From the NCBI RefSeq assembly GCF_963506605.1, contig NC_083278.1:90644001-90708000 (forward strand): a DNA stretch of 64,000 bases, in the 5' to 3' direction. Of this stretch, positions 1,422-60,378 are shown piece by piece. The notes below the pieces were generated by a model that ran no database searches, was not told the origin of the DNA, and saw only the letters and a program-made list of their open reading frames with translations. The position numbers were made by a program, and so were the translations under genes. This stretch comes from Zootoca vivipara (lineage: Eukaryota). Position 1 is the first letter of the stretch; every line of letters starts with the position of its first letter.

Positions 1422-1473
1422 CTTTAGATTCATTTCCTAACATTTTTTGCACACTTAACACTAATCAACTCAC

Positions 1474-21370: not shown

Positions 21371-21616
21371 TCCCAGCTCCTGCCAACCTAGCAGTTCGAA
21401 AGCACATCAAAATGCAAGTAGATAAATAGGAACCGCTATAGCGGGAAGGTAAACGGCGTTTCCGTGTGCTGCTCTGGTTTGCCAGAAGCAGCTTTGTCAT
21501 GCTGGCCACATGACCTGGAAGCTATATGCCGGCTCCCTCGGCCAATAATGCGAGATGAGCGCGCAACCGCAGAGTCGGTCACGACTGGACCTAATGGTCA
21601 GGGGTCCCTTTACCTT
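21371..21616 (+). mobile_element. Sauria SINE, 5'-truncated, TSD TATTCCCAGC
   Basis: Body match; direct repeat at 21368-21377 and 21617-21626. Confidence 0.9.
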
Positions 21617-22902
21617 TATTCCCAGCCCTAATCTGCCAGAACCTGAAGGATAAGAAACATGCAATAAACACCACCACCACCACCACCATCTTTGAAAGCG
21701 AGATGAAGAAAAAGAGAGGAAGGGGGTATTTTTATTTTTTCATTTGGGGAAAAAACCCACCCTTTCACCAGGGTTGCCTTTTTTCAAAAAACAAAGCAAA
21801 GTCAAAGTTTTTTTCTTTTGGCAAGCTGCTAGGACCTGGTAAATTGAGCTGGCATGGGGAATGTGAGCTCTGGCCAGTGGGCTGTAGAAGCGACAGTGGG
21901 CGCTTCGCATGTTGGGAATCAATGCTGCGATCGGCCACAGCTCTGGGAGCCCCTCTCCGATGCTGAGATCGGCTGTAGGTTGTCCAGGCGCAGCATCTCC
22001 AATGTTTCTGTCCCGGAACTGCGGTTAATCACAGCATCATCCACAGCATCATTGAAGACGGGTACCGGCATCTGGGCTCCAGTGGATGAGCCCGCCCCAC
22101 CCCCAGCCCGCCCCATCCCCTGGTGCATGTGCCCACCCAGGGCAGCAAACAGGGACACAATGTCCCTGCTGTCTACTACTCCATAATATAACAAAGCAAA
22201 AAAGTTAGTGAGTTATTGAGATCAAGCTTTGTAGTGTCCGCTTTACTTTTCGAAACAAAACCGACTACATTTATTTGAGTGTACATAGTTATTTCAAATT
22301 CATTAGTGTTTCTGTAATTCAAAGATAAATCCTATGCCAAATTCAATTCAGCTGAAAAACAGCAAGAGCAATTCTTCACTTTTTAAAAACTGATTTAAAC
22401 GAACACTTCATCAACACGAAGAATCAACACTTCATTCTTTTAATGTTAGGTCACTGACAAATGCTAAGCTCTAGAAGGTTTGAAAAACCTGCTATGACCT
22501 GCTGTGCCAAACTGGTTACTTGCCAAGTCTCAATTTTTCCTTAAATTTGTAGAGAGATCTTTCTTCTGTAATAATATTGCTCCCCGCCCCCCTTTTCAAT
22601 TCCCAATTAAAGTTAACAATATGGAGATATACAGTAATGAAAGCTGCTTTCATTATACACTAAATTTAATTAATGTGTCATACAAAAATGGAAGGACACC
22701 TGCGTTTAATATTACACTGTCAGAACATGCACACTGCAGTTCTGGATGACTTCCAACTAGGGCTGTTCTACACACTTTTTAAAAAAATTGCCTTCCCAGC
22801 TTTTGTACCCAGGACAAAACCGAGGTCCGTATGCTCTGTGCAGGGCAATGTGCACATTTAAAAATGGAAATAAACATAAAAACCTTAGATTTTTTTCTAT
22901 GT

Positions 22903-24216: not shown

Positions 24217-25121
24217 CATGTCTTAATGTGAAAATATTTAAGATAGAAATAGTTTTAGATCATGTGTAGCAGATGTTGGGGTGATAAGTAATAAAATACT
24301 ATTTTTGTAGTGAAATAATATGCTGTGTTGACTTTATTACTACAAAATTTAGTAACTTCAAAACTTTAAAACTGAAAGTGGATTGCACTTGGATTATTCC
24401 AAGATGATTAAACTTGCCTTATCAACACAAAAGAAGGCTTCATACATAAATGAGAGACTGCACTTCAGCCAGACAATTATGTACAGTAGTCTGTAGGGTT
24501 AAATAGTCTGATGATTTTAGTTTTATTCTTTATTGTAAACTGCTTTGTTTTACTACAATCAAGCTTTGTGAGATAAACAAATAGTGATCCTTATTATCCC
24601 TGTTCAGAGGGGCACCAACAATCCCAACCAACTAACTTGGGTCAATTTGGAATTCTGCTACCCCAACATCTTGCCAATCAATCATTAAGACTTACAATTT
24701 TTGGATATGCCATGACTTATGTAAGGTATCTAAAATAACCAAACCTCCTTCTCATCTATCTTTAATTCAACATGGGCTACGGGAGCATAAGTTTGCACAT
24801 ACTTCTAGATGAAACATGTCTGATGCACTAGAACTATAGTGGGAAGGATTCAACTCACTATAGGCTTGCTTTAAAACCTCTTATCTACATTGTGAAACAA
24901 GTAGAAAGCATATAAAAATAACAATTCATACACTATAGGAAAGAACCACTGTCCTCCTAGTGGTGCAGCAATAAAACTGCTAGCACATTTGCAAAGCTAA
25001 GCAGGGTGCGGTATGGTTTCAAATTGGATGGGAAACCATATGTTGAGATTCCTGCATTGCAGGGCGATGGACTAGACGACCCTTGTAATCCCTTCCAACT
25101 CTACAATTCGAATATACTTAC

Positions 25122-25633
25122 CGTATATTGGCTATATGTTGTTGCACAGGCTGATGCTGAAAATGTTCAGGCCACTGATGATGTAGACAGAATGAGGGCG
25201 AGGACTGAAGACAGCAGGCAGTCTGATACAAGGGTGTATGTTTTTGGCAAGCGGATGCTGAATATTCTGTATGAAGGTTTGGGCAGCAGGAAGTTAATGG
25301 AGATGGCGCCGCATTGCCAGACAGTGAAAGGCATTCTTGCTGATTACAATGGTGATTTAGAGGCTGATGATGGTATGGGCAAGGGCGACAACACTGTGAT
25401 AATACCTGTGGAGTTCTTTGGTCATCTACAGGCAGAAACGATGGTTTTAGCATGCCATTAAGTTGAAGGCACCCATTTGCACTCACTTTTCTTCTTGTGG
25501 TTTCCTTGGATGGGAGGTTTTGGACGGCAACATTGCCATCACTGGTTGCAAGGAGATCAGGACTAGTTCCATTGGTCGGGATGTTACCATTGCTCAGAAC
25601 TACAAAGTCATTGCTCCCATTGCTTGTAGCCAT
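25122..25633 (-). CDS. DISP1: DISP1 first coding exon (N-terminal Cys/His-rich cytoplasmic region), ATG at 25633, ends in phase 2
   Basis: Translation MATSNGSNDFVVLSN...GCLQLNG...CCRPCPYHH...SPSFCLHHQWPEHFQHQPVQQHIANIR matches the recalled vertebrate DISP1 N-terminus. Donor CG|GTAAGT at 25121. Polypyrimidine tract and TAG/AAG acceptor near 25664-25690. Confidence 0.96.
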
Positions 25634-25920: not shown

Positions 25921-26240
25921 GGGACGTGGGTGGCACTGTGGTCTAAACCACTGAGCCTAGGGCTTGCCAATCGGAAGGTCAGCGGTTCGAATCCCTGCAA
26001 CGGGATGAGCTCCCATTGCTTGGTCCCAGCTCCTGCCAACCTAGCAGTTCGAAAGCACATCAAAGTGCAAGTAGGTAGGGAAGGTAAACGGTGTTTCCGT
26101 GCGCTGCTCTAGTTTCGCCAAAAGCGGCTTAGTCATGCTGGCCACATGACCTGGAAGCTGTCTGCGGACAAATGCAGGTTCCCTCGGCTGGTAAAGCGAG
26201 AGTCGTTCGCAACTGGACTTAACTGTCAGGGGTCCTTAAT
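25921..26240 (+). mobile_element. Sauria SINE, full length with internal deletions
   Basis: GGGACGTGGGTGGCACTGTGG head and conserved body; degenerate TAAGTA..CAGTA flanks. Confidence 0.9.
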
Positions 26241-28772: not shown

Positions 28773-29129
28773 GAAGGTAAAGGTAAAGGGACCCCTGACC
28801 ATTAGGTCCAGTCATAACCGACTCTGGGGTTGCGGCGCTCATCTCGCGTTATTGGCCGAGGGAGCCAGCGTACAGCTTCCAGGTCATGTGGCCAACATGA
28901 CTAAGCTGCTTCTGGCGAACCAGAGCAGTGCACGGAAACACCGTTTACCTTCCCGCCGGAGCGGTACCTATTTATCTACTTGCACTTTGACATACCTTCG
29001 AACTGTTAGGTTGGCAGGAGCAGGGACCGAGCAATGGAAGCTCACCCCGTTGCGGGGATTCGAACCGCCGACCTTCTGATCGGCAAGCCCTAGGCTCTGT
29101 GGTTTAACCCACAGCACTACCCGCGTCCC
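28773..29129 (-). mobile_element. Sauria SINE, full length
   Basis: 12-bp TSD TCAGTATTAAAT at 28761-28772 and 29130-29141; complete head and tail. Confidence 0.93.
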
Positions 29130-29234
29130 TCAGTATTAAATATCAAACTGCAAAAAAACAAAAAACAATAGCAACTTCAATCTCTACCGACAGTTGCACA
29201 GAAGGCAATGTGACTCCCAAAAGTTCCTCTAGAT

Positions 29235-29370
29235 CAGGCATAGGCAAACTCGGGCCTCCAGATGTTTTGGGACTACAATTCCCATCAACCCTGACCACTG
29301 GTCCTGTTAGCTAGGGATGATGGGAGTTGTAGTCCCAAAACATCTGGAGGGCCAAGTTTGTGTATGCCTG
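29235..29370. mobile_element. Palindromic hAT MITE
   Basis: TIRs; perfect TSD CTCTAGAT. Confidence 0.9.
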
Positions 29371-30262
29371 CTCTAGATAGTCAGAACCCATACCCATATC
29401 CGCAAGCCGAACCAAGTGAAAGTGATCCCACAAACCTGGACCAGACAGTACTCAAGGAGCCTCCCTGAGATCTGCTTCAACAGTAGCATCAAATTAGGAA
29501 TGGAAATGAGTGACTTTGCCCTCAAAGTGCTTCACAAAACTAATACAGTGGGCTACTCAGTGATCTGTTGCTACATCTGCTGGGCTGATACTAACCAGGC
29601 CCTTCAGCTTTAGGAAAAGTTTCCCTGGGTAGTACACAGAGTATGCAATTGTGGCTATAAAGTGAGCAGTCTCTGATGCCATCACCTTCACATAGACTCT
29701 CACCTGTGTTTGGTCCAAGACTTTGAGGAAGAACTGTAATGCTGTACTGTACTCAGACATGTGTGCAGGATTTTGTGTTCGCTCAAGTGAATATTAATTT
29801 TAGATGTGGGTAAACCTCTCCCATTCCTTCAGGCCAAGATGACGTATTTCATTACTCTGAAGAGGTTTTTTATGTTATTATTAAGAAAGGGTGCGGGGGT
29901 GGGAGAAGGAGGCTTAAAAAAACATTGGTTCAAGAAACGCCATCTGGACTAACACCACTTACTATTGAAAAAGACAAGTGCAAAATCAGGTGGGAATGAA
30001 GTACTGGAAATGTGGTTTCATTTGCTATTTAGTGCAGAGCATTATAAATCTTTAGATCGCCTTAGGAACCAGCTAATTAGCTATTGAACCATTCATCCCC
30101 AGCCTCTCCTAAATCCAACAAAAACTCAACTTAAAAAAAAGACGACAGTTCTATAACATTTAGCCTAGATTCTACTTGCACATGAAATTATTTCATATAT
30201 AAGCTGAAAAAGAAAGCTCCCAAGCAAACAATCCTGGTTTAGAGGGGTTGTGCTGTTTAAAT

Positions 30263-30389
30263 CAGGCATAGGCACACTCAGCACTCCAGATGTTTGGGGA
30301 CTACAGCTCCCATCATCCCTGACCACTAGCTAGGGGTGATGGGAGTTGTAGTACCAAAACAGCTAGAGGGCCGAGTTTGCCTAGGTCTG
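30263..30389. mobile_element. Palindromic hAT MITE
   Basis: TIRs; perfect TSD GTTTAAAT. Confidence 0.88.
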
Positions 30390-30780
30390 GTTTAAATCAT
30401 TGAATTCCTGCCAGATAAAGAGATTGCAGTATGCTAGTTGATGGAAATATGCATTCTCATTCTAAAGTTTCCATTAAGGTGTTTTCCTTAAATGGTGCAA
30501 GACAGACAAACTGAGCAATAATCATAGCTGTCAATTTCTCCCTTTTTTTAAGGGAAATTCCCTTATGCTGAATAGGCTTCCTCACGAGGAAAGGGAAAAC
30601 TTGACAGCTATGCAATATGCAACAGAGTGACATGCAACAACCTGTATAATTATTAAAATAAATTCTATCATTTTCTACAGAATGTTTATACAGCAAGCCT
30701 GCACCCTTCTCAGTCATGACACATTCACATCCAACATCATACCAAGAGTTTCTACTTTAGTTTTACAACAAAATTATGTG

Positions 30781-32041: not shown

Positions 32042-33393
32042 TTGTTGTTGTTTAGTCGTTTAGTCGTGTCCGACTCTTCGTGACCCCATGGACCATAGCA
32101 CGCCAGGCACTCCTGTCTTGCACTGCCTCCCGCAGTTTGGTCAAACTCATGTTCGTAGCTTCGAGAACACTGTCCAACCATCTTGTCCTCTGACGTCCCC
32201 TTCTCCTAGTGCCCTCAATCTTTCCCAACATCAGGGTCTTTTCCAAGGATTCTTCTCTTCTCATGAGGTGGCCAAAGTATTGGAGCCTCAGCTTCACGAT
32301 CTGTCCTTCCAGGGAGCACTCAGGGCTGATTTCCTTAAGAATGGATAGGTTTGATCTTCTTGCAGTCCATGGGACTCTCAAGAGTCTCCTCCAGCACCAT
32401 AATTCAAAAGCATCAATTCTTCGGCGATCAGCCTTCTTTATGGTCCAGCTCTCACTTCCATACATCACTACTGGGAAAACCATAGCTTTAACTATACGGA
32501 CCTTTGTCGGCAAGGTGATGTCTCTGCTTTTTAAGATGCTGTCTAGGTTTGTCAATGCTTTTCTCCCAAGAAGCAGGCGTCTTTTAATTTCGTGACTGCT
32601 GTCACCATCTGCAGTGATCAAGGAGCCCAAGAAGGTGAAATCTCTCACTGCCTCCATTTCTTCCCCTTCTATTTGCCAGGAGGTGATGGGACCAGTGGCC
32701 ATGATCTTGGTTTTTTTGATGTTGAGCTTCAGACCATATTTTGCGCTCTTCTCTTTCACCCTCATTAAAAGGTTCTTTAATTCCTCCTCGCTTTCTGCCA
32801 TCAAGGTTGTGTCATCTGCATATCTGAGGTTGTTGATATTTCTTCCGGCAATCTTAATTCCGGCTTGGGATTCATCTAGTCCAGCCTTTCGCATGATGAA
32901 TTCTGCATATAAGTTAAATAAGCAGGGAGACAATATACAACCTTGTTGTACTCCTTTCCCAATTTTGAACCACTCAGTTGTTCCATATCCAGTTCTAACT
33001 GTAGCTTCTTGTCCCACATATCGAGATTTCTCAGGAGACAGATGAGGTGATCAGGCACTCCCATTTCTTTAAGAACTTGCCATAGTTTGCTGTGGTCGAC
33101 ACAGTCAAAGGCTTTTGCATAGTCAATGAAGCAGAAGTAGACGTTTTTCTGGAACTCTCTAGCTTTCTCCATAATCCAGCGCATGTTTGCTATTTGGTCT
33201 CTGGTTCCTCTGCCCTTTCGAAATCCAGCTTGCACTTCTGGGAGTTCTCGGTCCACATACTGCCTTAGCCTGCCTTGTAGAATTTTAAGCATAACCTTGC
33301 TAGCGTGTGAAATGAGCGCAATTGTGCGGTAGGTGGAGCATTCTTTGGCACTGCCCTTCTTTGGAATTGGGATGTAGACTGATCTTCTCCAAT
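32042..33393 (-). mobile_element. BovB (RTE) LINE, 5'-truncated, RT C-terminal part, one frameshift
   Basis: ORFs contain FIDYAKAFDCVDH, QGCILSPCLFNLY and LRYADD. (CAA)n tail. 12-bp TSD CCACTGTAGGTG at 32030-32041 and 33394-33405. 2-nt insertion at about 33021 relative to the second copy. Confidence 0.95.
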
Positions 33394-35437
33394 CCACTGT
33401 AGGTGCCACTAGCCAAACATCCAAGGGGAGGATGTTTCACATTTGGGTCTCTACCGTCCTATTCTTCTCCTTCTTTGGTGATCATTTGTAGCAGAGTAAG
33501 ATTGTCTTCCATGAACAGGGCCTTAAGGAGAAAGCTGGTTCTTGTGTCACAACATAATCCACCAATTCTTCATAAAGAGCTAAATTGATCCATCACATTA
33601 TTCAACACCTTCCAAGTCACGAAACATTTTTAAGATTAATCTTCTCCTCTCCTATTTAAGTGTTTTGTTGCATTACTGCCAATCCACATCCCAAAAGACT
33701 TGATGTGTCTGCCCTGACCTTGAGAAATTATTGCATTTCCTGGGCTGAAGGCTGGGCTAGGAATTGCAATTCCACTGACAGGGATTTTCCAGATATCACC
33801 ATGCCAAGGTAATAAAAATTGCTTTACAGATAGGCACAGAGAATGCACATTAATTCAGTATTGGCAGCAATAGAGTGAAGGAATGACTGCTGGGAATAGC
33901 AGTAAGGTTGGAGAGAAGAAATTAAAAGCCTTATTTTTTTTTTAAAAAAAATCTATCAACAGGTTAATTTACCTAAAGGTAAAGATTAAATGCAAGTGCA
34001 AGAACAATCCACTTAATGGGTTCTTGCCTTCATTGGGATGGTGCCAAACTATCTAGAAGGGACTTTAATATACAATTGTAGTTTCTGTTTAGAACAACGT
34101 ATTGTGCAACTTAAAAGTAAATCGGGTTGAAATAATTAAATGTATTAGGTAACTTGAGGAACTGGCAGAACTCTTAGTTAAATATGTCAATAGCTTCTTC
34201 ACCTCACAAACAGCAAAAGAGCCATTTTTAAGAGTTAGGTAAATTTACAAATAACATTTTAGACTAGAAATTACTGGTATATGCTTGCAAGACTTCCCTG
34301 TATCAAGCAAAGAAAGCTGTGCACTCTTACGGTAGCACTATGCAAAAAGGATTCTAAGAATTGTAATGCAATAAGTTTAAATCATACACTCTACAATTTT
34401 AAGCACCGTCTTTGCACTAAAACTTATATACACAGCTTAATGACTTTTCATTGCTATGTAAAGGCTAGCTTTCATTATGATAAATCCCTTATGCTTACAA
34501 TAATGCTACACACACACACAGTGTGATATGCTATTTTTCAGCTGAAAACGGAAGTAACTTGAACTGAAACTTGTACAGGAACTCACAATAAATTATGTAA
34601 ACAGGGAATGTCAATATTTAGAGTAACCCACAGCAGTAGAAAATCCTGTTAAGATAATGCACAACTGTAAAAGAATTGTTCTGCTACATGCATTTGAAAG
34701 GCAAATAACACAATAAGTTTGAAACCAATTTTGGATAATGTGTATTATCTAGAACCATCCAGTGTGCTGTGCTAACAGAAGTTGCAAAGCTGAATTAAAT
34801 TAAACTGGCTTTGACACACAGGAATCGTTAAGGACAGCTGAGCTATAATTTTAGCATATAACTGGTTAAAAGCTTTTGTACCTAAACATGCGCACACTTT
34901 TCAAACTGACAAGATACCTTTAGACTTCTGCACTTAATAGCTGTGTTTTGTTTAAAAAAAGGGGGTCATAAAACCATACAATATTTTAGTATTCTAAATA
35001 GCCATACAATGAACATGTTATAAATGACATTCAGTGCAGGTTTCCTAATCTGTTTATCAGATAAGAAAATTGCTTGTTGTACATGCATATCCCCAAGTAA
35101 ATTTAAGATACCAATCAAGTTTAATTGTTGAATGCCTTCTGCCAGTTTTGCAGGCACGTTCTGCTTCCTTAAAAACAATACCTACTTACATTTGTTCTCT
35201 TCAATCACTATAAAAGCATTTTGCCTTCTGTTGGGTCAGAACAAAACCAGGAAAATCTCTTACTTTAGACACGTTCCCTGGCAGCCTTTAAGTTTTGCCA
35301 CACTTATTTTCAGGCTTCTTAAGTCTCCCCCTTCAACTGCAGTCCCATTGTAAGTCAACAATCATATGCATACTTAACACAGCTTTGCAAAAACAAATAA
35401 ACAAACCCGTAAGTTCTTAATACTTGCATTAACTCAC

Positions 35438-38034: not shown

Positions 38035-38559
38035 ATTCACATATTGTGCTCATGCAGACTTCCCATAGCATCACTGTGAGAACATGATGCTGGCCTAGAT
38101 GGCCAGTTGGTCTGATCCAGAGGGCTCTTATGTTCTTAAATCAGCGTTTTTACTTGTTGATTTAAATCCCTGAAATAAAGTATCTCTCCACTGCGATTCA
38201 TAGCATTGCAGTAATTAATCCAGAAAGGAACATACCATAGTGCTCAAATCACCATCTTCCAGGAAGGCATATTACATTTTACTTTACCTTTTTTTATTAC
38301 ACTATATCAGAAGAGGTGGATGACACTCCTGGGTACAACTGTCAACTAAGCATCTGGGAGCAAAGATGAGGCAGAAAGAATTCCCAAGTTATGCAATTGC
38401 TCCTTCAAAAGTAACTGGAACCACATCCTTCCACAAATGACATGTACCCTGGGAAAGCTACAATGGTCAAGGGCTGCAAAAAAGATTCTATACAGTGGAA
38501 CATCATTCCTTAGGTTTTATATGCAATACTCTGGCCTTTACCTCCTTGAAGGTGTTATT

Positions 38560-38695
38560 CAGGCATCCCCAAACTGCGGCCCTCCAGATGTTTTGGCCTA
38601 CAACTCCCATGATCCCTAGCTAACAGGACCAGTGGTCGGGGAAGATGGGAATTGTAGTCCAAAACATCTGGAGGGCTGGAGTTTGGGGATGCCTG
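38560..38695. mobile_element. Palindromic hAT MITE
   Basis: TIRs; perfect TSD GTGTTATT. Confidence 0.9.
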
Positions 38696-40964
38696 GTGTT
38701 ATTAGTGAGCAAGAGCTCGTGCAAAGGGGTTAAGTTGTATAGCCCTAGACAATACAGACCCAGACATGAATTACTGTCAAATCAGAGACTTGCACATATT
38801 ACTCAGCTCAGCATTATGCAGGTTCCTAGTAGCCAGAGAAATGTTGAAGAAAGACGTAGCCAAACTCTCACAAATAAGAACAAGCATTTTGTTAGCATGT
38901 GAAGACAGGCTGAAAGCCAATGGAAGATTACAGAAATGCAACTGGCCTCTATGGCAGCCACTTCTTATTAAACACCTATGAAAAGCAGTAAGATGCCTAG
39001 TTGAAGTCACAGCAGTAAGATGCCTAGCTGTGAAGTCACAATTTATGAACAGTAGAAATCTGTCTGTTTTGTTTCTATGGCTAGTGATGATCATTTCCAC
39101 AAGCATGATTTTATTGGCCAATGCCCTGCTACCTACTGCTTTTCAGACACATAAATAGGCGTGGTTGTGATAGAGACATGTAGTGAAGACAGGCATTTAA
39201 GTAAAGAAACCAAAAGGGTTCTGTACAATAGAGGCCGACTAATAACCTCAGCAGGCATGCTTTAATTTCAATTCTTTATGGATAAGCTAACCAACAATAT
39301 AAGCTCTTGAGTTCAAAAGGAACACTACACACACCTGTGGAGTTTCAATCAAAGCACAAAATCTGTTAAACAGGCTGATCTCCGCTACACACAATCAGCT
39401 GGTTATAAGCAAAGGAATGTGTGACATTGGTGGAGTTGGGTCATATGTATCTTACCTTAGCAGCTTAAAAGCTCTGGTGGCGTATTATGAGGTATGATAG
39501 CTGGCCCTATGCCAACCTTAATAGCACTTATGGACCTATAAACATAAGAATGCATACATGCATATTATATTCTGCAAATATGCAAGAATAAGTCCAAAAA
39601 AATTAAATAAGTACAGTCTGACTTGCTTTTTCCCTTCTTCTGACTTTCCCTTTTTCCCTTCCCTTCAGAATAAGTATAAAAATGTAATTATTCAAATTTT
39701 AAAAGTCACAACACAAACAAATCATGCAGATCGGTTCAGTTTCCCCCCATCATACACCATAAAGGCTTGTTAAACAACTGATGTAAACAAACAATTATTG
39801 AAAGAAATCAAACAACTACAGCGTATGGTTTAAAATATTAAAAAGTGCAAAAATTTGCATGTTTCTAATAACATTCAAAATGTGTACCTTTCTCAAAATG
39901 TATAAAATTGGATGAGGAAATTAAATTGTTTCAACAGTCATAAAAGCTTGACTTTCTAAAGCAGAGTTTAACACGCCTGTTTGTAACTTCAAGTAAGTTG
40001 CATGATCTGACAAACATGCACCAATAATAAATGACTTACACTGGAGTGCAGCTGTACTAACATTTATACAAAGTTACACAGTCATATGCATTCCATTATC
40101 ACAGGTGTTGGCTTTCCACTATGAGTTACAACTAATAGGAAACTTGAACAAGTATACGCAAACCCCCAGACTGGGCTATTTTTACAAGCAGCCAAGGCAG
40201 GAGATGATATGAGTCCATCACCCGTAAACATAACAAATGATGCAAAAAGCCACATGCAGCACTTCATAAATTGGACAAGGTTGGTACTTTAGAAATCCCA
40301 CCATCTTGATGATATACACTGATTACATTGCTTGGCAGGCATCTAGAGAAGACACCACCTGTCCATTTGTGTACAATGCTGTTAGAACAAAAAGGAAGTA
40401 TTCTCAATTCTACCTTGTGAGAATTAAGACAAGGTGAAAAGCAGAGCCACCATATTGGAGCTAGCTGTCTAACTGCACTCACCCACACCCTGGTCAACTC
40501 TTACATGTTTGGAAGCCGCACAGTATTCAAGGGAAACCATTCAATGGAAACCCAGCCAGATGGGTGGGGTATGTATTAATTATTAGTAGTATCATGAAGA
40601 ATCCTGGCAATCTCTATCGTTACTCGTTTCAGGAGAATTACTAACAATAGATCTCTCAGCTTTCAGTATCATCACTCATGGAATTCTGGAGCAGCGGTCC
40701 AAGCTTGAGTGGAGACAACACTGGGTTGTAATGATTCTGCTTACATGTGGGTAGCTGGTTCCAGGTGATGCTGAACCTCATAGCATTGACGTCTCAGGGT
40801 CTTGCAGCAGTGTTCAAAATTTCCCCAGTGCCAGGCGTGTTTTGCTACTGGCACGGGTCCAATTATTATTCATTTCAACTCTATACCGCTTTACATTTTA
40901 AAGGGGGGAAAACCTCAAAGCGGTTTACAACACATTTAAGCATCAAATACCGGTACATCAAATA

Positions 40965-44170: not shown

Positions 44171-45737
44171 AGAGCTTAGAGAAAGCTTAACTCCTCTTCA
44201 AAGTACAAAATCTCCTAACCCCTGTTTAAATACACTACACATGCACCATGACTCTTCAAAAATGGTGTGTGTGTTTTTTTAATCTTCCCTGGGGGGAAAG
44301 AGGCCTAGCTCATAATTTCTGTATTAAAACTCTGTACTATTAGCTAAGGAATGGAATTATTAGTGACAGGTTCACTGAATTACTTGAGAGGTCACTAGAG
44401 CTTCCTCAAAATCTAAAACTGCCACCATAAATTTAACTAATGACAAGTGATTTTGTAAGCTACCAGAAGGAGATGTACACAGGATAAGAACTCTTCCAAA
44501 CACCAAGTTAGGCACTGCACAACAGACTTCTACAGCAATGACAGAGGCATATAAATTGAAATGCATCAACGCTAGTTTAGATGCTGCTTTCACAATTATG
44601 CTATAACTATAACATTTACAATCCACACAGTAAAGATGAGAAGCCAAGGACAAAAATATAATTGATGATGGCAATCCCATGCACTTAAACATGAACTTCC
44701 CCAATCAATCAAGAATATTTGCAGAGAAGGATCTGATTCTGAAGCCAAAAAGAGTTCACAGATGAAAAGGACAAAACTATCCCATCACCTACAGCTTTTC
44801 TTCCCAAAGTGTTTTGCCAATGCACAGCAGAAGAGTGGGGGCTGCAGGGAAGGAGGCTTTGAATTTCATCTGTATGCCCCTTTTTGTCTTAACTTGGACC
44901 CTGCTCTAAGTTCCCGGGGCAATTCTTGTTTAAGCACGTGGAAGTGCCATAATCAAATCTAGTTTGGAATCAAATCAGAAGCTGATTCCTGATCAATACA
45001 CTTGAGGGCAATTTCATTTCCCCATAAGTCAACCTGTGTAAAGTAACTGACCATGACACAGTCATCAATTTTGAGAAAACAGAAAGACTATTCTCCTGGT
45101 GTTGATACAAACATATCAAAGATGAAATGAAGGCGCTGCTCTCAAACAGAAAGTTTTGTCATGAACTAAACATTTGTTTAGCACCAATTAGGTGCTGGTC
45201 TGATCTCTCACTCACACACAAATAAAATTAGCCTACTAGAGGCACCTCTGCCTTGAAGTGAAAATTATCTGAAAGCCACAGGGATGAGTGTGCATTACAA
45301 AGAAGCAGCCAACTTCTCAAGTGGGTAAGAGATCCATCCCAATTTTCAAACAACCCATCTGCGAAACCCAACTTCTCCCTGAGCCTTCCCCAATGGTAGG
45401 GAAACAAAGACCGATATAATGATTCTATAGTAGGACCCTGAAAACTGTCAAAATGAAAAATCCTACAATATCTGGAAGGGCATTCCAGGGGCTGCAAGTT
45501 AGGTCAAATCTACCCCTCCAATGTCAGAGATCTGATATCACAGACTCCCTCCTTAAGGCTGGTTATTAAAAGCCAACAGATGTTAGAGTTCCATAATCTG
45601 CAGAAGCAGAAGGGGGCTATCTTGAGATGTGGCTTGGGTCCAAAGTCCTCCTGGCACTCTGACAGGCCACAAACCAGAGTGAAATTTAAATAAACTTATG
45701 AGCATGTCTAAATCTCTCCTTCCCCTTTCCTCTACCT

Positions 45738-46083
45738 GAGACGTCGGCAACGTTTTCTGCCCGTGGGCAGGAGGATTCCCACAGACTATCGTCCGTGGGC
45801 CTGATATGGACCGCACAGGCGCAGACGTAATTTCCGGTGCCGCGCTGCCCATATTCCAGAACACCGGAAATGGCTTCTGCGCATGTCCGCGGCTGTGCAG
45901 AAGCGATTTCTGGTGCTGGGCTGGCCATTTCCAAAATGTCCACAGCGCCAGAAATCGCTTCTGCGGCTGCGTAGATGCAGTTTTCGGCGCTGCTCAGCAA
46001 GTCCCCACGCCGCACCGGTTTACCGCAGTATGCGGGGGACTTGCTGAGCGGGCGGCTCATGGGCCGGAGGTTGCCGATGCCTG
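45738..46083. mobile_element. CpG-rich non-autonomous hAT element
   Basis: Imperfect TIRs (..TCGGCAAC / GTTGCCGATGCCTG); perfect TSD CTCTACCT at 45730-45737 and 46084-46091. Confidence 0.85.
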
Positions 46084-47479
46084 CTCTACCTCATGGTAGA
46101 CCACATGTTTTGTATGGAAAAGATCCCAGGATCAATCTTTGGTATCTCCAGGTGGGGATGAGAAAGACTCCTGTCTGAAAAGCCACTGCCAGTAAAGGGC
46201 AAAGGGAAAGCATTAAGAGTACAGTTGTTGTTGGAAGCTTGCATATAGGCCCAGCCAGGTGCAGGATAAAGCAGTTCAAATGCCTTCAGTTCCGCTCCCT
46301 TGCAACCTTAGGAATGCAGCCTTAATATTGAAATAAATGTTTGGGTTGTATGATCTTAATCAAAGTGATCTCAAATAACCTTAGTAAAATTGGAGTAACT
46401 ATATATAAAAAGTAACAACCAACGGTACATAAAATGCAAAATAACAAGTTTCACATTTTCCTTTAAATAGACCCTTCCTTTTCCCTCTCTCCAAGATATA
46501 CTTGTTAAAGTGTCATCATGTCCAATCTCAGGGCTGAATTGCACAAGGCTTTTCTTGTATATTTGCCCCCCTTGTAAAAGCAACATGTGCAATGATCATG
46601 ACATCACCCTCCAAAACCAAAGGTTTCTGACAAGCATTCTCAGTAATCTGAAGGCTAATTAAAAAAGTGTTTGGATTGGCTCCACCCCTATAATTTCTCA
46701 GAAGGGCTGGTGTGCTGTATCACACTTCTACTCAACAATACAGGCTACAGTTCAGGTCAGGGAAAATTATGCACAGTACACTGAGAATACCATCAATGGT
46801 CGTTCACTCTCTGCTCATCATCAGTTGCTCGTGAAGACCAGAAACAAAAGCACTTTAAAGTAGGCAAGTATGGAAAAAGAAAAAGAAGGCAAGCAGATAC
46901 TGACATTGCTAGCTACCAAACTGTTCTGACAAAAAACATCAACTTTCATTTGGTCTAATTGAATGCAAATAGTTAAGCAATTTAGAATGTGCTAAACCCA
47001 TGGACCAGTAATTTTAATGTGATTTTTAATGTGATCGTTCTTTTAACATTCACAGATATGTTAAATAAGCAGCCAGCCATACAACAGGCTCTGCTAAAAT
47101 CTACTAAGAGCAGAACCATGATTTTGTACTGCTTCTCATAATTAAATACTGTAATCTGGCTAAACCTTATAGCAAATTTGTGCCGAGTCCAGAACCGAGT
47201 CCAGAGTGAAAATGAAATTCTGATAATACTTTAATGCTAACCAACTGAACAAGAACAGTATATAATCTGATGAGAAATTAACAGGGGAAGGGATGTCTTT
47301 GTTACGTCAAGCCTACAAAAGGAGGAAACTGCCTTCAGAACCACTTTCCCCTCCAACTCCTCCATTACTCAAATCTCAATCTTCCTCCTCACTCACAGCC
47401 GAAACCCAACAGACTAGAACCTCCAGCCAATTAAGTCTGCTGTCAGCCACATCAATAACAGAATTAACCTCTTAATATC

Positions 47480-47617: not shown

Positions 47618-48873
47618 TAATTCACACACTGAATGCTCTCTGCAGCTGTAGTTCCAACAAAGACTACTAAACAAAAATCAGTTTTTCGCTTGTTACAGCT
47701 GGAGATTTGAGCTACAAGGAACTAGAAATATTTGGATGCTGGAGCCTAAAATCAGCAGTCAGAAGGTCCTGCTGTATTTCCCCTGCTTGATCAAAAGGTC
47801 AGGCTCTTATTATTTAAACCAGGCATGGCCAATCTACAGGTCACTCACTATTTAATAATTTTATATCACTCCTCTCTACATCAACTATAAACCAGCTGGG
47901 CAACCTCAGAGTCCCCAGTTCAGATACTCTGCAGAACGACAAGGCCTCAGAGTTTTCACTTTATTATGGTGGTTTTTTTTAATTAAACTGCATGTTTAAT
48001 TATTTTATTCTGGAGCATATTTATGTCAGGTGGAGCAGGTTTCTGATTATGTGCAGAATATACACAAATACTCCACAATATTGCACTGCTGTAATATTAT
48101 ACAGAGAGTTTTATTTGCTACTTCCTAATTAATTAGCAAATTAATTAATTAACAGAGGATAAATGTTTTAAGTACATTAAATAAAGGTGCAACAGCCAAG
48201 ACAAATAAAACCATTTCTACACTGATCTGAATTATAAAATAAAGCTTGTGCTACACCAATGTCTTTTTAAAAAATCAAATTAAAAAGTTGAGAAACTGTT
48301 TTAAAAACAACAAAGCAAATGCTTATTTTTGCTTTCCTGGGATGCTCTAGTTCAGCCTCCCTTTTAAAAAACTAAACCAAAGAAGGCATTTTTCTCCTTC
48401 CTGAACTTCAAGTCAAATACTATTTAGGACAAGATCCCAGCACACTTTAATTTACTTCTCCTTTTGCTATTGTTACACAGCCATTTCTAAATATTTGTCC
48501 TTCCCAGATTACCAAAATGGACTGAGATGTGATTCCTTTGTAGTGCAGATGATTTGCACAGACCTCAAGCAGTAGAGAAATTCTCACGCCTTCAAGGCAC
48601 AAACCGGATTTAGGAGGTGCTCTGCTCACATGGCAGGGTAAACTAATAATTAAAGTCAAAGAGAGCTTTCTAACTAACTTGCTCAGAGAAAAGGGTTGCA
48701 GTATTGTTGTTACTGCACTACGGAAGGGCTCTGGTTTCTAATTTTTTTCCACAAAAGCCAGAGGCCATCACAAAACACAGCTATCGCAAGTCAGTGTCTC
48801 ATAATGAATCTCTAGTTTTACAACAGGATCTCCATGAGAGGTGAAGCTTACATATCCTCTGACACCCCTACAC

Positions 48874-49005
48874 TAAGGTTACCAGATTTTTTTTCAATGA
48901 ATCTGGGGACACTTTTCAACTTCCTATTAAATAGATGGATTTTGTCAGGGGACTGATTTGTAAATCCAGAGATTGCCCGGGAAACGGGGACATCTGGTAA
49001 TCCTA
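48874..49005. mobile_element. hAT (Blackjack-like) MITE
   Basis: TIRs TAAGGTTACCAGAT / ATCTGGTAATCCTA; perfect TSD CCCTACAC. Confidence 0.82.
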
Positions 49006-49148
49006 CCCTACACAAAACCAAAATTCTTTATAACCTTCCATGAATATAATACTGTACATAACTTACTCATGCACATAATACAAGCAGTGGCAAAACTAGC
49101 CTTTATTTCACCAGGGTCAAAGTTCCAGTTTGGCACCCTCTACCTGCA

Positions 49149-50626: not shown

Positions 50627-50923
50627 GGTAAAGGAACCACGGACGACTCTGGGGTTGCAGCGCTCATCTCGCTTTATTGGCCAAGGAAGCCGGCGTACAA
50701 CGTCCGGGTCATGTGGCCAGCATGACTAAGCCGCTTCTGGCGAAACCAGAGCAGCGTACGGAAAACCGTTTACCTTCCCGCTGGAGTGGTACCTATTTAT
50801 CTACTTGTACTTTGACGTGCTTTCGAACTGCTAGGTTGGCAGGAGCAGGGACTGAGCAATGGGGGCTCAACCCGGCACGGGGATTCGAACTGCCAACCTT
50901 CTGATTGGCGCCACCCGTGTCCC
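50627..50923 (-). mobile_element. Sauria SINE with internal deletions
   Basis: 13-bp TSD TATGGCTATCATA at 50614-50626 and 50924-50936. Confidence 0.92.
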
Positions 50924-51109: not shown

Positions 51110-52279
51110 TCACATTTGCCATGTTCTGTGCTTATGAATCTGCCAAAACAGGAAATCTCTTACCACCCTGCTCATTATCATAATACAGCTATGCCAAGAA
51201 AGTAAATATCCACACAGGAATATAGTCAAACATGATAAAATCCTACACCTGCCCTGCCCCACACCACGCAGTCTGTAGCATAGTAATAGCTGGTAAAAAC
51301 AAAACCATTGATTTTAATCCTGTTAAAGAATCAACTCTCGTGTAATCTTTTTACAAAGCCATCTCTAGAGATGATGACCAGAACTTCAAAGCATTTTTAA
51401 AAAATTACTACCTCAAAAAATAAACACTGCTTTAAAGTCAAGAAGCTACGTGTACATACTATTGTGGTTCTTCAAAGGTCTTCAGCTGCTGCATTTTACA
51501 ATGGAAATTGATGAAAGGAAAACATTAACTGAACCTCTATTTTACTAGCACACATCAATCTGTTTGATGCAACGGGTTAACCCAGCTGTTAACTTGATGT
51601 GGAACATTAAAAATAGGGGTTAAACAAAAAGTATTCTAAACAAAGAAACACAAAAATCTAAGATGCGTTTTACTGTGTCTTTATGACATAATAAATAGCC
51701 AACATTTCTTACTAGAAGTGAAGACTGATTCAGCCTTCCACAAAACGTTTGATCTACCTGAAGACAAGATCTGCTTGTCAGAGCTTCAAACTTAGTGCTT
51801 CGGCAGCTAGCAGATCTGAGGCAAACATTGTGAATTAAAGCAGCACACTCAAATACATTTACAATATAAAATGGCAAGCTTATGAAAATACAATCCATAT
51901 CTACCAAGCACTGCTTGCTTTTGTAGGGATCAATCAACATTACCAAAGATAGTCATGATGTTGTTTTTTCTGTATGATTGCTTACTGAAAGCACTGAAAT
52001 TTCTGAATCAGACTGAGTACACCCATCCTATCGTCTTTAAGATACAATTATTCCAACATCTCCAAATACTGCACCCACATGCATGTATGGCAATTATGTC
52101 CTTGGCTTACAATGGCTAAGATGGTCAAGGATCACTTTAACTCAGTGTCTATAATTTATCATCACTACTATCAGAGTTATATGAAAGATGGTTTTGGCAA
52201 GTGACAAACACATCTAAGTTGCACTGGAGAAAACTCCCTTACGGTAGGTATCCCATGTATTCAAAAGTAGGCCCTAGAT

Positions 52280-53723
52280 CACGGGTGTCAAACACAAGGC
52301 CTGGGGGCCTAATCTGGCCCGCCAGACCTCGTCATGTGGCCCGCGTAGCCGCCACCGACAATAGCCGCCGACAGTAGTTCTGGAGCCTGCGATTGGCTGA
52401 GGGTCAAAACCAGGGGCGGGGCTGCAGGCGGAGGCCGGGGCGCTGGAGCCGCGCTGACGGCCTTGGCCAGGGAATTTCAATTTCGAATGAGGCTGAGGGA
52501 GGCGGTGGCACAGCCACCAGACGGGGAAGTGAGATGCAGGAGGAGGAGGAGGAAGCCCGCCAAGGAGGTAGGGAAGCCCTACAGGCGCCGCCGGCAAAGT
52601 TGGTGCCGGGACGGAGCAGCGCTGGATTTTTTTTGGGCGGGATTTGCTGTTGTCTCAGAGAGCGAGTGAGGCGGCACTGGGGAGCCGCCGCCCGCCGCTT
52701 CCCTTCCTCTCCTCGGCTGCATCCGGGAGGTGGGCGAGCGAGCGGGCGAAAGGGACGCGGAGTGAGCCTGAGGGGGAAGTAGGCGAAGCGCAACAGCCGC
52801 TCTCTTGATGGAGCCGGGTTTCTCTTCCCTCTTCCCCCGTTTTCTCCTCATAGACACTCGGGAGGGTGCCTGGCTTTTGCTCTGCCCCCCACCCCCGAGC
52901 CGCCCTTTGGCTTCTCAGTTCCGGCGGAACTGCTCCCCGGGGGGCGGCCGGGAGGGAGGCGGCGGCACGGGTTCCTGCTCTTCCCGCTCTGCCGCCGCCT
53001 CCTCTCAGCCCCTCGTGATGTAGGGCTCCAGATGGAGTCGCCTCGCGGTTTGAGTAGGTGGGAGGGGAATTTTTTTTGGGGGGGGAGGTTTTCAAGCCTC
53101 CTCTGCCTGAAGTCCGGGTAGGGAGAGGCGGCGGCGAAGACGACAACAGCGCGGGTGGGGGAAGAGCAGCTCTGAGGCGAAGATGCACGTCCGCTGGGGC
53201 TGCCGCCGCCTTCCTCCTCGGGAAGTCCGCTGCCCTCCCTCAGCGTGAGGGGAAGGGACTATGGTGCTGAGGAGGGAGGATGCAAAAGCAAAGCAGGGAG
53301 TTGGTGCTGCACCGCATGTTCCTGCCCCTCTCCAAAGCATGGCGTGGGTTGCAGCGTGTGGCATCCTGCCTAGCGGGGTTTGGGTGTGCGGAGGGCGGGA
53401 GAGGGAAGCCCTCTTTCCATCTGCAGGTTTTTAATCCCAGCAGTGGCTTTCTCCTTCCTGCCGAAGGTTTAGTTGATCCCCACCTTTTGTTCAAATTTCC
53501 CTCGTTTACATCCCCTCCCACACACGCGCCACGACGCAGGAATGTGATCCGCGTGGGGGCGGGAATGAGCTTGCATTATTACAAAAAACAGTAATAATTG
53601 AATGCAGTGACAATAATTTATGATAATAAAGAGTGGACACATAGTCCTACAGACACAACCGGCCCTTTGAGGGTGACCAAACTGCTGAAGCGGCCCCCGA
53701 TGAATTTGAGTTTGACACCCCTG
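52280..53723. mobile_element. Non-autonomous hAT (Charlie/Buster-like) element, 1444 bp, carrying a GC/CpG-rich promoter-like interior (Pack-TIR-like)
   Basis: TIRs CACGGGTGTCAAAC / GTTTGACACCCCTG (13/14 match). Identical 8-bp TSD CCCTAGAT at 52272-52279 and 53724-53731. No transposase ORF. Confidence 0.88.
52380..53560. promoter_or_regulatory. CpG-island-like segment with CCAAT box, GC box and ETS motifs, inside the hAT element
   Basis: Dense CpG against an AT-rich background. ATTGG at 52392-52396, GGGGCGGGGC at 52413-52422, GGAAGT at 52525-52530. Activity unknown. Confidence 0.5.
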
Positions 53724-53929
53724 CCCTAGATCCATAATGTGATGATTTCACATACTGTGCTGAGCTGTTAGGCTGTTGCTGATTTGGTGATATTGGACCA
53801 CCTTGTTTGCTGGGTGTATCTGGTTTATAGAAGAACTCACCATTGTTCAATGCACTATTTGAATATATAACAACTGTAAAATTGAGTTTCATTTATCTAA
53901 AATATCTGGAACTGATATTATTTAGGCAT

Positions 53930-55119: not shown

Positions 55120-55540
55120 TCAGATAAGTAGCCGTGTTGGTCTGACACAGTTGAAATAAAAAATAAAAATAAAAAATTGACCTGTAGCACCTTAGAGACC
55201 TTGCTGATCAGCAGGTCGGCGGTTCAAATCCCCGTGACGGGGTGAGCTCCCGTTGCTCGGTCCCAGCTCCTGGCAACCTAGCAATTCGAAAGCACGTCAA
55301 AGTGCAAGTAGATAAATAGGGACCGCTCCAGCGGGAAGGTAAATGGCATTTCCGTGTGCTGCTCTGGTTCGCCAGAAGCAGCTTTGTCATGCTAGCCACA
55401 TGGCCCGGAAGCTGTCTGCGGACAAACGCCAGCTCCCTCAGCCAATAACATGAGATGAGCGCTGCAACCCCAGAGTCGGTCACGACTGGACCTAATGGTC
55501 AGGGGTCCCTTTACCTTTACCTTTAAGGTGCTACTGGACA
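55120..55540. mobile_element. Second Penelope-like inverted remnant with its centre replaced by a Sauria SINE
   Basis: GTAGCCGTGTTGGTCTG..GTAGCACCTTAGAGACC on the left and TTAAGGTGCTACTGG on the right. 12-bp TSD GTAGATTTACAT at 55108-55119 and 55541-55552. Confidence 0.75.
55201..55521 (+). mobile_element. Sauria SINE (head truncated) lying in the centre of a Penelope-like remnant
   Basis: Body and (ACCTTT)n tail match other copies. Confidence 0.9.
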
Positions 55541-56026
55541 GTAGATTTACATGTTAGAGTCACTCTCTTCTGACTCTATGAAACTTTTTACTTTGACTTT
55601 TCCTTGGTTGGCTAATTTTGTGTTCTTTTGGAGATAATGTTACTTGGTCATTAACCCTCCATCAGCTGCAATGCTATGCATATTGATAAATCTTTAACAT
55701 TTCTTCCTCGCCCTTTGCAAATATGTTTTCACAGCTCCATTCTCATCCAGGACTGAAACATTCTCTCAGCTTTTTATGATAGCTTCCTCTGCTTTGTCTG
55801 GAGACATCAAAATGAAATACCTTGGATACCACAGTTCACTTTAAGAAGCTCTGAGCAATGCGCTGGCAAATCACTTCTTTCTCCATTCCACAACAGCTGA
55901 AGCCTGCATACTGCAAGCATCACCTGATTGACAGGTGGGCATGGTTTGGGGGGAAATGGCATGTGTCAACTGGACCCCTTGACAGGCCAGAACAGGCCCA
56001 CAGGCTGGAAGTTTCCTAACCTAAAG

Positions 56027-57777: not shown

Positions 57778-57937
57778 NNNNNNNNNNNNNNNNNNNNNNN
57801 NNNNNNNNNNNNNNNNNNNNNNNNNNNNNNNNNNNNNNNNNNNNNNNNNNNNNNNNNNNNNNNNNNNNNNNNNNNNNNNNNNNNNNNNNNNNNNNNNNNN
57901 NNNNNNNNNNNNNNNNNNNNNNNNNNNNNNNNNNNNN
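57778..57937. other. Assembly gap (160 N)
   Basis: Run of N. Confidence 1.
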
Positions 57938-58221: not shown

Positions 58222-59367
58222 TGTTGTTGTTGTTGTTTAGTTGTTTAGTCGTGTCCGACTCTTCGTGACCCCATGGACCATAGCACGCCAGGCACTCCTG
58301 TCTTCCACTGCCTCCCGCAGTTTGGTCAAACTCATGTTGGTAGCTTCGAGAACACTGTCCAACCATCTCGTCCTCTGTCGTCCCCTTCTCCTAGTGCCCT
58401 CAATCTTTCCCAACATCAGGGTCTTCTCTTCTCATGAGGTGGCCAAAGTATTGGAGCCTCAGCCTCAGGATCTGTCCTTCCAGTGAGCACTCAGGGCTGA
58501 TTTCCTTCAGAATGGATAGGTTTGATCTTCTTGCAGTCCATGGGACTCTCAAGAGTCTCCTCCAGCACCATAATTCAAAAGCATCAAATCAATTCTTCGG
58601 CGATCAGCCTTCTTTATGGTCCAGCTCTCACTTCCATACATCACTACTGGGAAAACCATAGCTTTAACTATACGGACCTTTGTTGGCAAGGTGATGTCTC
58701 TGCTTTTTAATATGCTGTCTAGGTTTGTCATTGCTTTTCTCCCAAGAAGCAGGCGTCTTTTAATTTTGTGACTGCTGTCACCATCTGCAGTGATCAAGGA
58801 GCCCAAGAAAGTAAAATCTCTCACTGTCTCCATTTCTTCTCCTTCTATTTGCCAGGAGGTGATGGGACCAGTGGCCATGATCTTGGTTTTTTTGATGTTG
58901 AGCTTCAGACCACATTTTGCGCTCTCCTCTTTCATCCTCATTAAAAGGTTCTTTAATTCCTCCTCACTTTCTGCCATCAAGGTTGTGTCATCTGCATATC
59001 TGAGGTTGTTGATATTTCTTCTGGCAATCTTAATTCTGGCTTGAGATTCATCTAGTCCAGCCTTTCGCATGATGAATTCTGTATATAAGTTAAATAAGCA
59101 GGGAGACAATATACGACCTTGTTGTACTCCTTTCCCAATTTTGAACCACTCAGTTGTTCCATATCCAGTTCTAACTGTAGCTTCTTGTCCCACATAGAGA
59201 TTTCTCAGGAGACAGATGAGGTGATCAGGCACTCCCATTTCTTTAAGAACTTGCCATAGTTTGCTGTGGTCGACACAGTCAAAGGCTTTTGCATAGTCAA
59301 TGAAGCAAAAGTAGATGTTTTTCTGGAACTCTCTAGCTTTCTCCATAATCCAGCGCATGTTTGCTAT
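58222..59367 (-). mobile_element. BovB (RTE) LINE, 5'-truncated, disrupted RT
   Basis: Same RT motifs (YADD) and very similar to the copy at 32042-33393. 5-bp duplication near 58583-58592 and a short deletion near 58424. No clear TSD. Confidence 0.95.
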
Positions 59368-59667
59368 CTTTAACTTAACACAGGTATTTATGAAAATTGC
59401 AGGTGGTGGGCACCATCTTGGAAAATGCATTATCTTTCCCTCCCCCAACACTGTTATACAAGATGCCTCTTCAAAGAGGTTGCCTGCTATAACACACATA
59501 TCCATCGCTATAACAAAAATAAGGTATATTTTCCCTCCAAACTATTGTTTTTAATTCATTTGCCAATTCTTGCAGATTTAATTAAAACTTTTTATCCAGC
59601 TAAGATTTCCTTAGTAAGATGATGACAATCCTAGTTCCTTTCATTTCAAACTAAATACTCCAAGTAG

Positions 59668-60378
59668 AATAGCAAGGACAAATCAGTCCCGAGCACATCC
59701 AGTCCCTGCTAAGGAGGACATGCAACTGGAAGTTTAGTTCTTTATTGGCAAAGCAATTGAATACATCAGCTCCTAAGTGCAAGAATCCCAAACTCTTGTT
59801 AAATAGCTAGCTGGGCATCTCCTTCCTCTGACCTGTGCTCCATCTCAGAAGTTGGGGCAACAGAGCACCATGCCTCCTCCAGACCATTTAAACCAGTGAT
59901 GGCCAAACTAGGCCCTCCAGGTTTTGGGACTACAACTCCCATCATCCCTAGCTAACAGGACCAGTGGTCAGGGGTGATGGGAATTGTAGTCCCAAAACAG
60001 CTGGAGAACCAAGTTTGGCCATCACTGATTTAAACCCTCTCTTCTGATGTGGTGTGCGCAAGCAACTTCCCCTGTGAGGCATCTCCACCTGCTCCTGTCC
60101 CCGCTTTAAGCCCCTCCTTGACCTTGGAGACTGTGGGGAGGGAATGGAGGGGGTTCTAAGGATTCAACTCTCTCTCTCTCTAAAATGTCTCTTCCACCTC
60201 TGCGCCTCCCTTCAGCTCTCCCTCTGCCTGCTTTTCTTCTGTCTCTGTCTGCCCAGCTTCTTCCTCTCCCCCTGCCTCACAGGGAGCACCAAACCCCACA
60301 AACCCCACCGGCTCCTTCCCCTGGGCCACCCTCCTGCCCTCCTCTGCCCACCCTTCAGACTCCTGCCTGTCGCTGACA
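59668..60378 (-). mobile_element. Putative degenerate solo LTR (Gypsy-like), interrupted by the MITE at 59894
   Basis: Minus strand begins TGTCA, then a purine-rich U3-like tract, TTTAAAT and AATAAA; 3' end and TSD unclear. Confidence 0.35.
59894..60027. mobile_element. Palindromic hAT MITE (CAGTGATGGCCAAAC TIR variant)
   Basis: TIRs; perfect TSD ATTTAAAC. Confidence 0.9.

What the first reader, a model, noticed from the sequence alone, without database searches (positions are those of the whole stretch)
52272..53731. The window's only large CpG island is cargo of a hAT transposon (Pack-hAT mobile promoter candidate upstream of the DISP1 coding exons)
Seen: the ~1.2-kb GC/CpG-rich block looks at first like the DISP1 promoter, but it is enclosed by matching hAT TIRs (CACGGGTGTCAAAC ... 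GTTTGACACCCCTG) and an identical 8-bp TSD (CCCTAGAT). The interior has no transposase. It reads as a patchwork of promoter and 5'UTR-like pieces: CCAAT box 52392, GC box 52413, ETS site 52525, GGC/GAG runs, and plus-strand donor-like AG|GTAGGG and AG|GTGGGC. Known: plant Pack-MULEs preferentially capture GC-rich gene 5' ends, and Pack-TIRs are reported in animals. Inference: a lizard hAT family may capture and disperse host CpG-island fragments, here placing a ready-made promoter (antisense or alternative TSS) in a Hedgehog-pathway gene. Retained CpGs imply a young insertion or protection from methylation.
Basis: partly seen in the sequence, partly recalled or inferred. Interest (0 to 1): 0.82.

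Follow-up and report, generated by a model that had tools for sequence, protein, structure and literature searches.

The report
Non-autonomous hAT transposon with CpG-rich core
A 1.4-kb cut-and-paste (hAT) transposon with no transposase gene sits upstream of the lizard DISP1 coding exons and carries 1.2 kb of CpG-rich DNA; whether that DNA is a captured host promoter could not be tested here, and an ordinary family-own core is slightly more likely.

Summary
An identical 8-bp duplication (CCCTAGAT) brackets a 1,444-bp element at 52280-53723 with 14-nt inverted ends (13/14). Block shuffles never give such a structure.

- **Ends:** about 65 bp on the left and 150 bp on the right match hAT MITEs in vertebrate-like metagenome contigs. 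Those MITEs lack the 1.2-kb GC-rich core.
- **Core:** GC 0.64, CpG o/e 0.72 against 0.31 for the window. No transposase, Pfam or Rfam match, and no other copy in the window.
- **Context:** DISP1 lies on the minus strand, with its ATG exon at 25121-25633. The element is 26.6 kb upstream, and its plus-strand promoter-like features are antisense to the gene.

Capture of a host promoter is untested.

Two controls weaken the promoter reading. Other TEs in the window (a SINE family, a 346-bp MITE) keep CpG o/e 0.64-0.99. Only GC boxes exceed shuffles (7 vs 2.95); CCAAT does not, and the consensus ETS patterns tested are absent.

That note is unchecked. It hints at a multicopy family.

Verdict: real hAT insertion, known kind, origin of the core open.

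The parts
52272..52279 (.). left target-site duplication CCCTAGAT
52280..52293 (+). left terminal inverted repeat, CACGGGTGTCAAAC. Position 3 differs from the family consensus CAG.
52280..52344 (+). family-own 5' end, alignable to the 5' ends of the MITEs in L001, L002 and L004, with conserved GGCCCG and TGTGGCCC motifs
   Evidence: alignment A1
52345..53570 (.). GC/CpG-rich core of about 1.2 kb (GC 0.64, CpG o/e about 0.72). No transposase, no Pfam or Rfam match, absent from the cross-species MITE relatives.
52392..52421 (.). one CCAAT (minus strand, 52392-52396) and one perfect GC box (52413-52421), 113-142 bp inside the left end
   Evidence: GC boxes 7 vs 2.95 in shuffles; CCAAT not enriched.
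52955..53002 (.). GC-rich hairpin with a 13-bp perfect stem. It gives only sub-threshold miRNA-model hits.
53250..53499 (.). CpG-poor sub-block inside the core (7 CpG, o/e 0.36, TpG/CpA o/e 1.2)
53576..53723 (+). family-own AT-rich 3' subterminal region and end, alignable to the 3' part of the L001 MITE
   Evidence: alignment A2
53710..53723 (-). right terminal inverted repeat, CAGGGGTGTCAAAC on the minus strand
53724..53731 (.). right target-site duplication CCCTAGAT

Best explanation
This is a 1,444-bp non-autonomous hAT DNA transposon with Charlie-like ends. It inserted by cut-and-paste and duplicated the 8-bp target CCCTAGAT. The site is 26.6 kb 5' of the ATG exon of DISP1, which lies on the minus strand, so the element is in a 5'UTR intron or upstream of the gene.

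The two ends, about 65 bp on the left and about 150 bp on the right, are the family backbone that a hAT transposase encoded elsewhere recognises. Between them lies a 1.2-kb GC/CpG-rich, non-coding core.

My most likely reading is that the core is the internal sequence of a lizard-lineage non-autonomous hAT family. On that reading it travels in every copy and is moved in trans. Its CpG richness would reflect its base composition and modest age, as for the other TEs in this window, and not shown promoter activity. Where the core came from originally is left open: an old host capture, or the parent element's own leader.

Shown: the insertion, the backbone, the lack of a transposase, and the gene context. 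Inferred: the multicopy family status and the absence of function.
For: - TSD plus TIR. Such a structure with at most 1 mismatch occurred 0.0 times in 100 shuffles.
- The ends align to hAT MITEs in metagenome contigs L001, L002 and L004, which are multicopy there with their own AT-rich interior.
- Nine TSD-flanked hAT-type insertions lie in this 64-kb window against 0.37 expected, so hAT mobilisation was intense in this genome.
- No transposase or other domain in interior ORFs, and no protein relatives of two interior ORFs.
- CpG o/e 0.64-0.89 in seven or more SINE copies that are only 79-88% alike, and 0.99 in a 346-bp MITE. CpG richness therefore marks TEs in general here.
- Promoter motifs are near the shuffle expectation, apart from GC boxes at 7 vs 2.95, reached by 14 of 500 shuffles.
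- Lead only, unchecked: scan note s1-848860 describes a 1,473-letter Charlie-type hAT with about 1.2 kb of CpG-island-like DNA on another piece of this genome.
Against: - No second copy was seen by me: none in the window, and the rest of the genome was out of reach.
- The core is absent from the cross-species relatives, which is also what a capture would look like.
- The core is heterogeneous. About 900 bp of CpG-island-like DNA is followed by a 250-bp CpG-poor stretch (o/e 0.36), as in a promoter-to-intron fragment of a host gene.
- One perfect GC box and one CCAAT lie close together near the left end.
Confidence: 0.5

Rival explanations
1. Pack-hAT. A MITE-like hAT backbone acquired a host CpG-island fragment (promoter, first exon, start of intron 1) during gap repair or template switching, and then transposed into the DISP1 5' region as a single or low-copy element.
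For: - The core lies exactly between backbone ends that relatives share without it.
- It meets CpG-island criteria.
- GC boxes are enriched, and a GC box and a CCAAT lie 113-142 bp inside the left end.
- Two plus-strand donor-like sites lie downstream.
- The core shifts from CpG-rich to CpG-poor along the plus strand.
- Pack-TIRs are documented in animals: 208 of 370 are hAT, including a frog hAT-N8_XT that carried a 5'UTR fragment to three sites (PMC8277862).
Against: - No donor locus was identified.
- CCAAT, ETS, NRF1, YY1 and TATA are not above shuffles.
- No coding remnant was found.
- CpG richness is shared by ordinary TEs here.
- Pack-TIRs are rare, a few per animal genome in PMC8277862, compared with ordinary non-autonomous hATs.
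- The unchecked same-size element elsewhere (s1-848860) would make a unique capture unlikely.
Confidence: 0.3
2. An internally deleted autonomous hAT, Ds-like. On this reading the GC-rich core is the parent element's own promoter and long untranslated leader, and the transposase ORF was lost by deletion.
For: The only CCAAT and GC-box pair sits about 110-140 bp inside one end and faces inward on the plus strand. From my own knowledge, maize Ac has a long CpG-rich leader.
Against: No trace of a BED finger or a hAT dimerisation domain in any interior ORF. Sequence just inside the 65-bp left end is unrelated to the relatives'. No autonomous relative was available for comparison.
Confidence: 0.12
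3. Composite: an older short MITE into which a different GC-rich element or retrocopy later inserted.
For: Backbone ends plus a foreign middle.
Against: No TSD, poly(A) or TIR at the core's boundaries, only a 6-bp CCGCGT shared near both. No similarity to any other repeat in the window.
Confidence: 0.05
4. The block is the native DISP1 promoter or exon 1, and the TIR and TSD are chance.
For: It lies 5' of the ATG exon.
Against: The TIR+TSD structure is never seen in shuffles. 65 bp and about 150 bp of the ends are homologous to hAT MITEs.
Confidence: 0.02

Closest known systems
Non-autonomous hAT elements and MITEs of vertebrates (Charlie-type hAT-N families; maize Ds as the archetype)
   Same: 8-bp TSD, a short TIR beginning CAG, conserved subterminal motifs, no transposase, and interiors that differ between families sharing the same ends (Ds heterogeneity is stated in the abstract of PMC3260210).
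   Different: The core is unusually long and GC/CpG-rich (64% GC, 1.2 kb). The other eight hAT-type insertions in this window are 117-346 bp.
Pack-TIR / Pack-hAT of animals (PMC8277862)
   Same: hAT ends around non-transposase DNA. A frog precedent carries a 5'UTR fragment and is multicopy.
   Different: Membership needs an identified parental host locus. None could be searched for here.
Pack-MULEs of rice (PMC5861414)
   Same: That paper was found but not read here.
   Different: Different superfamily (Mutator, 9-bp TSD, long TIRs) and plants. No donor was shown here.
Bat Helitrons carrying the NUBPL promoter (PMC4224331, PMC4778049)
   Different: Rolling-circle mechanism without TIR or TSD. 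There the donor and transcript evidence exist; here neither does.

Membership tests
hAT superfamily, non-autonomous element | 8-bp target-site duplication | tested here: met
   CCCTAGAT on both sides
hAT superfamily, non-autonomous element | short terminal inverted repeats beginning CA(G) | tested here: met
   14 nt, 13/14. The left copy has CAC instead of CAG.
hAT superfamily, non-autonomous element | target-site preference nTnnnnAn | tested here: inconclusive
   CCCTAGAT has A at position 7 but C at position 2. The flanks of the relatives and of the other eight insertions fit nTnTAnAn.
hAT superfamily, non-autonomous element | ends homologous to those of other mobile copies | tested here: met
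   5' positions 1-63 and 3' positions 1362-1444 match L001:104-679. The 5' end also matches L002 and L004.
hAT superfamily, non-autonomous element | no transposase ORF | tested here: met
   The longest interior ORF (177 aa) and ten further ORFs of 70-129 aa have no significant Pfam match.
hAT superfamily, non-autonomous element | mobilised by a hAT transposase in trans | not testable with these tools
   inferred from the ends and the TSD only
Pack-TIR (Pack-hAT) | interior has a parental, TIR-less copy in the host genome | not testable with these tools
The other collections hold no lizard genome.
Pack-TIR (Pack-hAT) | interior is not part of the TE family's own consensus | tested here: inconclusive
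   It is absent from cross-species relatives, but same-genome copies could not be examined.
Pack-TIR (Pack-hAT) | interior is recognisably genic (exon or promoter of a known gene) | tested here: inconclusive
   No protein or Pfam hit. Only GC boxes exceed shuffles.
CpG island (Takai-Jones: at least 500 bp, GC at least 0.55, o/e at least 0.65) | sequence criteria | tested here: met
   52251-53250: GC 0.65-0.68, o/e 0.73-0.78 in 500-bp windows
CpG island (functional) | unmethylated in the germline, promoter chromatin, transcription start | not testable with these tools
   reads tools unavailable

The most novel reading that the evidence does not exclude
A lizard hAT family picked up a host CpG-island promoter, has spread it to several chromosomes as a ready-made mobile promoter, and this copy drives antisense or alternative transcripts in the 5' region of DISP1.
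Probability: 0.12. Interest if true: 0.6.

Novelty: new member of a known kind. Interest (0 to 1): 0.3.

Why it matters
If the core proves to be a host promoter carried by hAT ends and present in several copies, it would be a reptile example of a cut-and-paste transposon dispersing CpG-island promoters. So far that is documented mainly for bat Helitrons and a few frog and alligator Pack-TIRs.

If it is an ordinary hAT-N family, the lesson is practical. In this genome the CpG-rich patches inside introns are mostly TEs, so a CpG island next to a gene should not be read as its promoter without checking for TIRs and TSDs.

Tried and rejected
Nothing found:
- Other copies or fragments of the element in the window: none.
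- Internal duplication of about 450 bp, suggested by two short repeats: alignment score within the shuffle range.
- Rfam: no match at gathering scores. At E up to 1, only sub-threshold miRNA models on one GC hairpin.
- Pfam on ten interior ORFs: nothing above cut-off.
- Word-based protein search with the 177-aa and 88-aa ORFs, hoping to pull other copies or donors from public assemblies: nothing.
- Scans of prokaryotic genome contigs and viral contigs with the 5' end pattern and a 24-mer of the core: nothing, as expected.
- Paper search for the TIR string: nothing.
- The scan's own notes by sequence and by relatives: blank.

Not run:
- The large HMMER search. A first exon would be too short to detect, and the ORFs look like non-coding GC-rich translation.

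Rejected readings:
- Native DISP1 promoter.
- Nested retro-insertion: no poly(A) and no inner TSD.

Full report
**Observation.** The sequence shows CCCTAGAT at 52272-52279 and again at 53724-53731. Immediately inside are CACGGGTGTCAAAC (52280-52293) and, at 53710-53723, the reverse complement of CAGGGGTGTCAAAC, which is 13 of 14. I scanned the whole window for identical 8-mers that bracket a 14-nt inverted repeat within 6 kb. Nine such structures turned up with at most 3 mismatches, against 0.37 per block-shuffled window. With at most 1 mismatch the shuffles gave 0.0. The finding is one of the nine, so it is not chance.

**Anatomy.** One metagenome scan with the end motif returned five short vertebrate-like contigs.
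- L001:104-679 is a 576-bp MITE. It shares only positions 1-63 and 1362-1444 of our element.
- L002 and L004 carry the same 5' end and the same AT-rich interior as L001.
- Alignments A1 and A2 put the family-own backbone at 52280 to about 52344 on the left. On the right it runs from about 53576 to 53723, including an AT-rich subterminal stretch.
- Between these lies a core of about 1,225 bp (52345-53570) that the relatives lack.
- The core has no significant internal repeat and no other copy in the window. It has no Rfam family and no Pfam domain in its ORFs. Two of its ORFs have no protein relatives.
- It is therefore a non-autonomous hAT element. I call the ends Charlie-like from my memory of MER58/Charlie termini, which is a lead and not a test.

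**Context.** A stop-free stretch at 25121-25633 on the minus strand matches residues 1-170 of human DISP1 (E 1e-68). The stretch at 5565-5693 on the minus strand matches residues 175-216 (E 1e-17).
- DISP1 therefore runs right to left. The element lies 26.6 kb 5' of the ATG exon, in a 5'UTR intron or upstream of the gene.
- The N run at 57778-57937 was left alone.

**CpG island.** The element has GC 0.62 and CpG o/e 0.72. The window has 0.41 and 0.31, and the median 1-kb background o/e is 0.24. It meets the sequence criteria for a CpG island. The controls matter, though.
- A tRNA-like SINE family with at least seven copies only 79-88% alike keeps o/e 0.64-0.89.
- A 346-bp TSD-flanked MITE at 45738-46083 has o/e 0.99.
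- The hAT backbone ends themselves have o/e 0.66-0.68, on few CpGs.
- CpG richness in this window therefore marks TEs in general. It does not by itself indicate a host promoter or protection from methylation.
- The core is not uniform. The stretch 53250-53499 has only 7 CpGs (o/e 0.36) and a TpG/CpA excess. A promoter-to-intron fragment would look like this, but the numbers are small.

**Promoter motifs.** I compared motif counts with 500 dinucleotide shuffles of the core.
- GC boxes: 7 against 2.95 ± 1.66, reached by 14 shuffles.
- CCAAT: 1 against 1.67.
- Consensus ETS, NRF1, YY1 and TATA: none.
- Donor-like AGGTRGG: 1 against 0.21.
- The 'patchwork of promoter pieces' is thus mostly what GC-rich DNA gives. 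The exception is one perfect GC box next to one CCAAT, 113-142 bp inside the left end.

**What could not be done.**
- The decisive test is to compare the core with the rest of this genome, looking for TIR-flanked copies or a TIR-less donor. That needs the assembly or its reads.
- The scans of prokaryotic and viral collections were blank, as expected.
- The scan's notebook holds an unchecked first-reader note, s1-848860. It describes a 1,473-letter Charlie-type hAT with about 1.2 kb of CpG-island-like DNA on another piece of the same genome. The near-identical size suggests the same family and the same core. I could not read that sequence, so it is a lead and not evidence.

**Reading.**
- Certain (about 0.97): a hAT-type cut-and-paste insertion of a transposase-less element.
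- Open: the origin of the core.
- I put about 0.5 on the core being the internal sequence of a multicopy non-autonomous family, of whatever ultimate origin.
- I put about 0.3 on a single or low-copy capture of a host 5' gene fragment (Pack-hAT).
- I put about 0.12 on a deletion derivative that keeps the parent's promoter and leader.
- The rest goes to a composite, or to chance.
- Promoter activity in place is possible, because long CpG-dense DNA tends to stay unmethylated in vertebrates (my own knowledge). It is unshown.
- One base of the left TIR departs from the family's CAG. This copy is therefore not pristine and may no longer move.

**Comparison with what is known.**
- Pack-TIRs are described in animals. 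Of 370 found in 100 genomes, 208 are hAT, and a frog hAT-N8_XT carried a 5'UTR fragment to three chromosomes (PMC8277862).
- Bat Helitrons amplified the NUBPL promoter (PMC4224331 and PMC4778049, found; content from my own knowledge).

**In passing.** The window holds eight other TSD-flanked hAT-type MITEs. Recent hAT activity in this genome has been heavy.

Noticed in passing
window 1297-1429, 1625-1776, 29227-29378, 30255-30397, 38552-38703, 59886-60035, 48866-49013: Seven short MITE insertions (117-136 bp) with perfect 8-bp TSDs and 14-nt TIRs (CAGGCAT..., CAGTGATGGCCAAA, TAGGATTACCAGAT). With the two longer elements that makes nine such structures, against 0.37 expected from shuffles, and their TSDs fit nTnTAnAn. 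hAT-type MITEs have been very active in this genome.
   Followed up: partly
window 45730-46091: A 346-bp element with TSD CTCTACCT and imperfect TIRs (GAGACGTCGGCAAC / CAGGCATCGGCAAC). It has CpG o/e 0.99 and is built of three hairpin-forming units of about 75 bp. It is the second most CpG-rich block of the window.
   Followed up: partly
window 8070-8307, 12397-12728, 21371-21618, 25963-26185, 28774-29087, 50644-50905, 55150-55560: A tRNA-like SINE family with at least seven copies that are 79-88% alike and all keep CpG o/e 0.64-0.89. These copies account for most of the other CpG-rich patches in the window.
   Followed up: partly
window 25121-25633 (-) and 5565-5693 (-): DISP1 coding exons on the minus strand: residues 1-170 and 175-216 of the human protein.
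   Followed up: yes
window 32055-33436 (-) and 58552-59541 (-): Two LINE reverse-transcriptase fragments (Pfam RVT_1) whose translations are nearly identical over long stretches.
   Followed up: no
L001:104-679, L002, L004 (metagenome contigs Ga0308020_*): A hAT MITE family in vertebrate-like DNA within a metagenome. It shares about 65 bp of 5' end and about 150 bp of 3' end with the lizard element, at about 80% identity over the termini. This means either an old family or horizontal spread. The source organism is unknown.
   Followed up: partly
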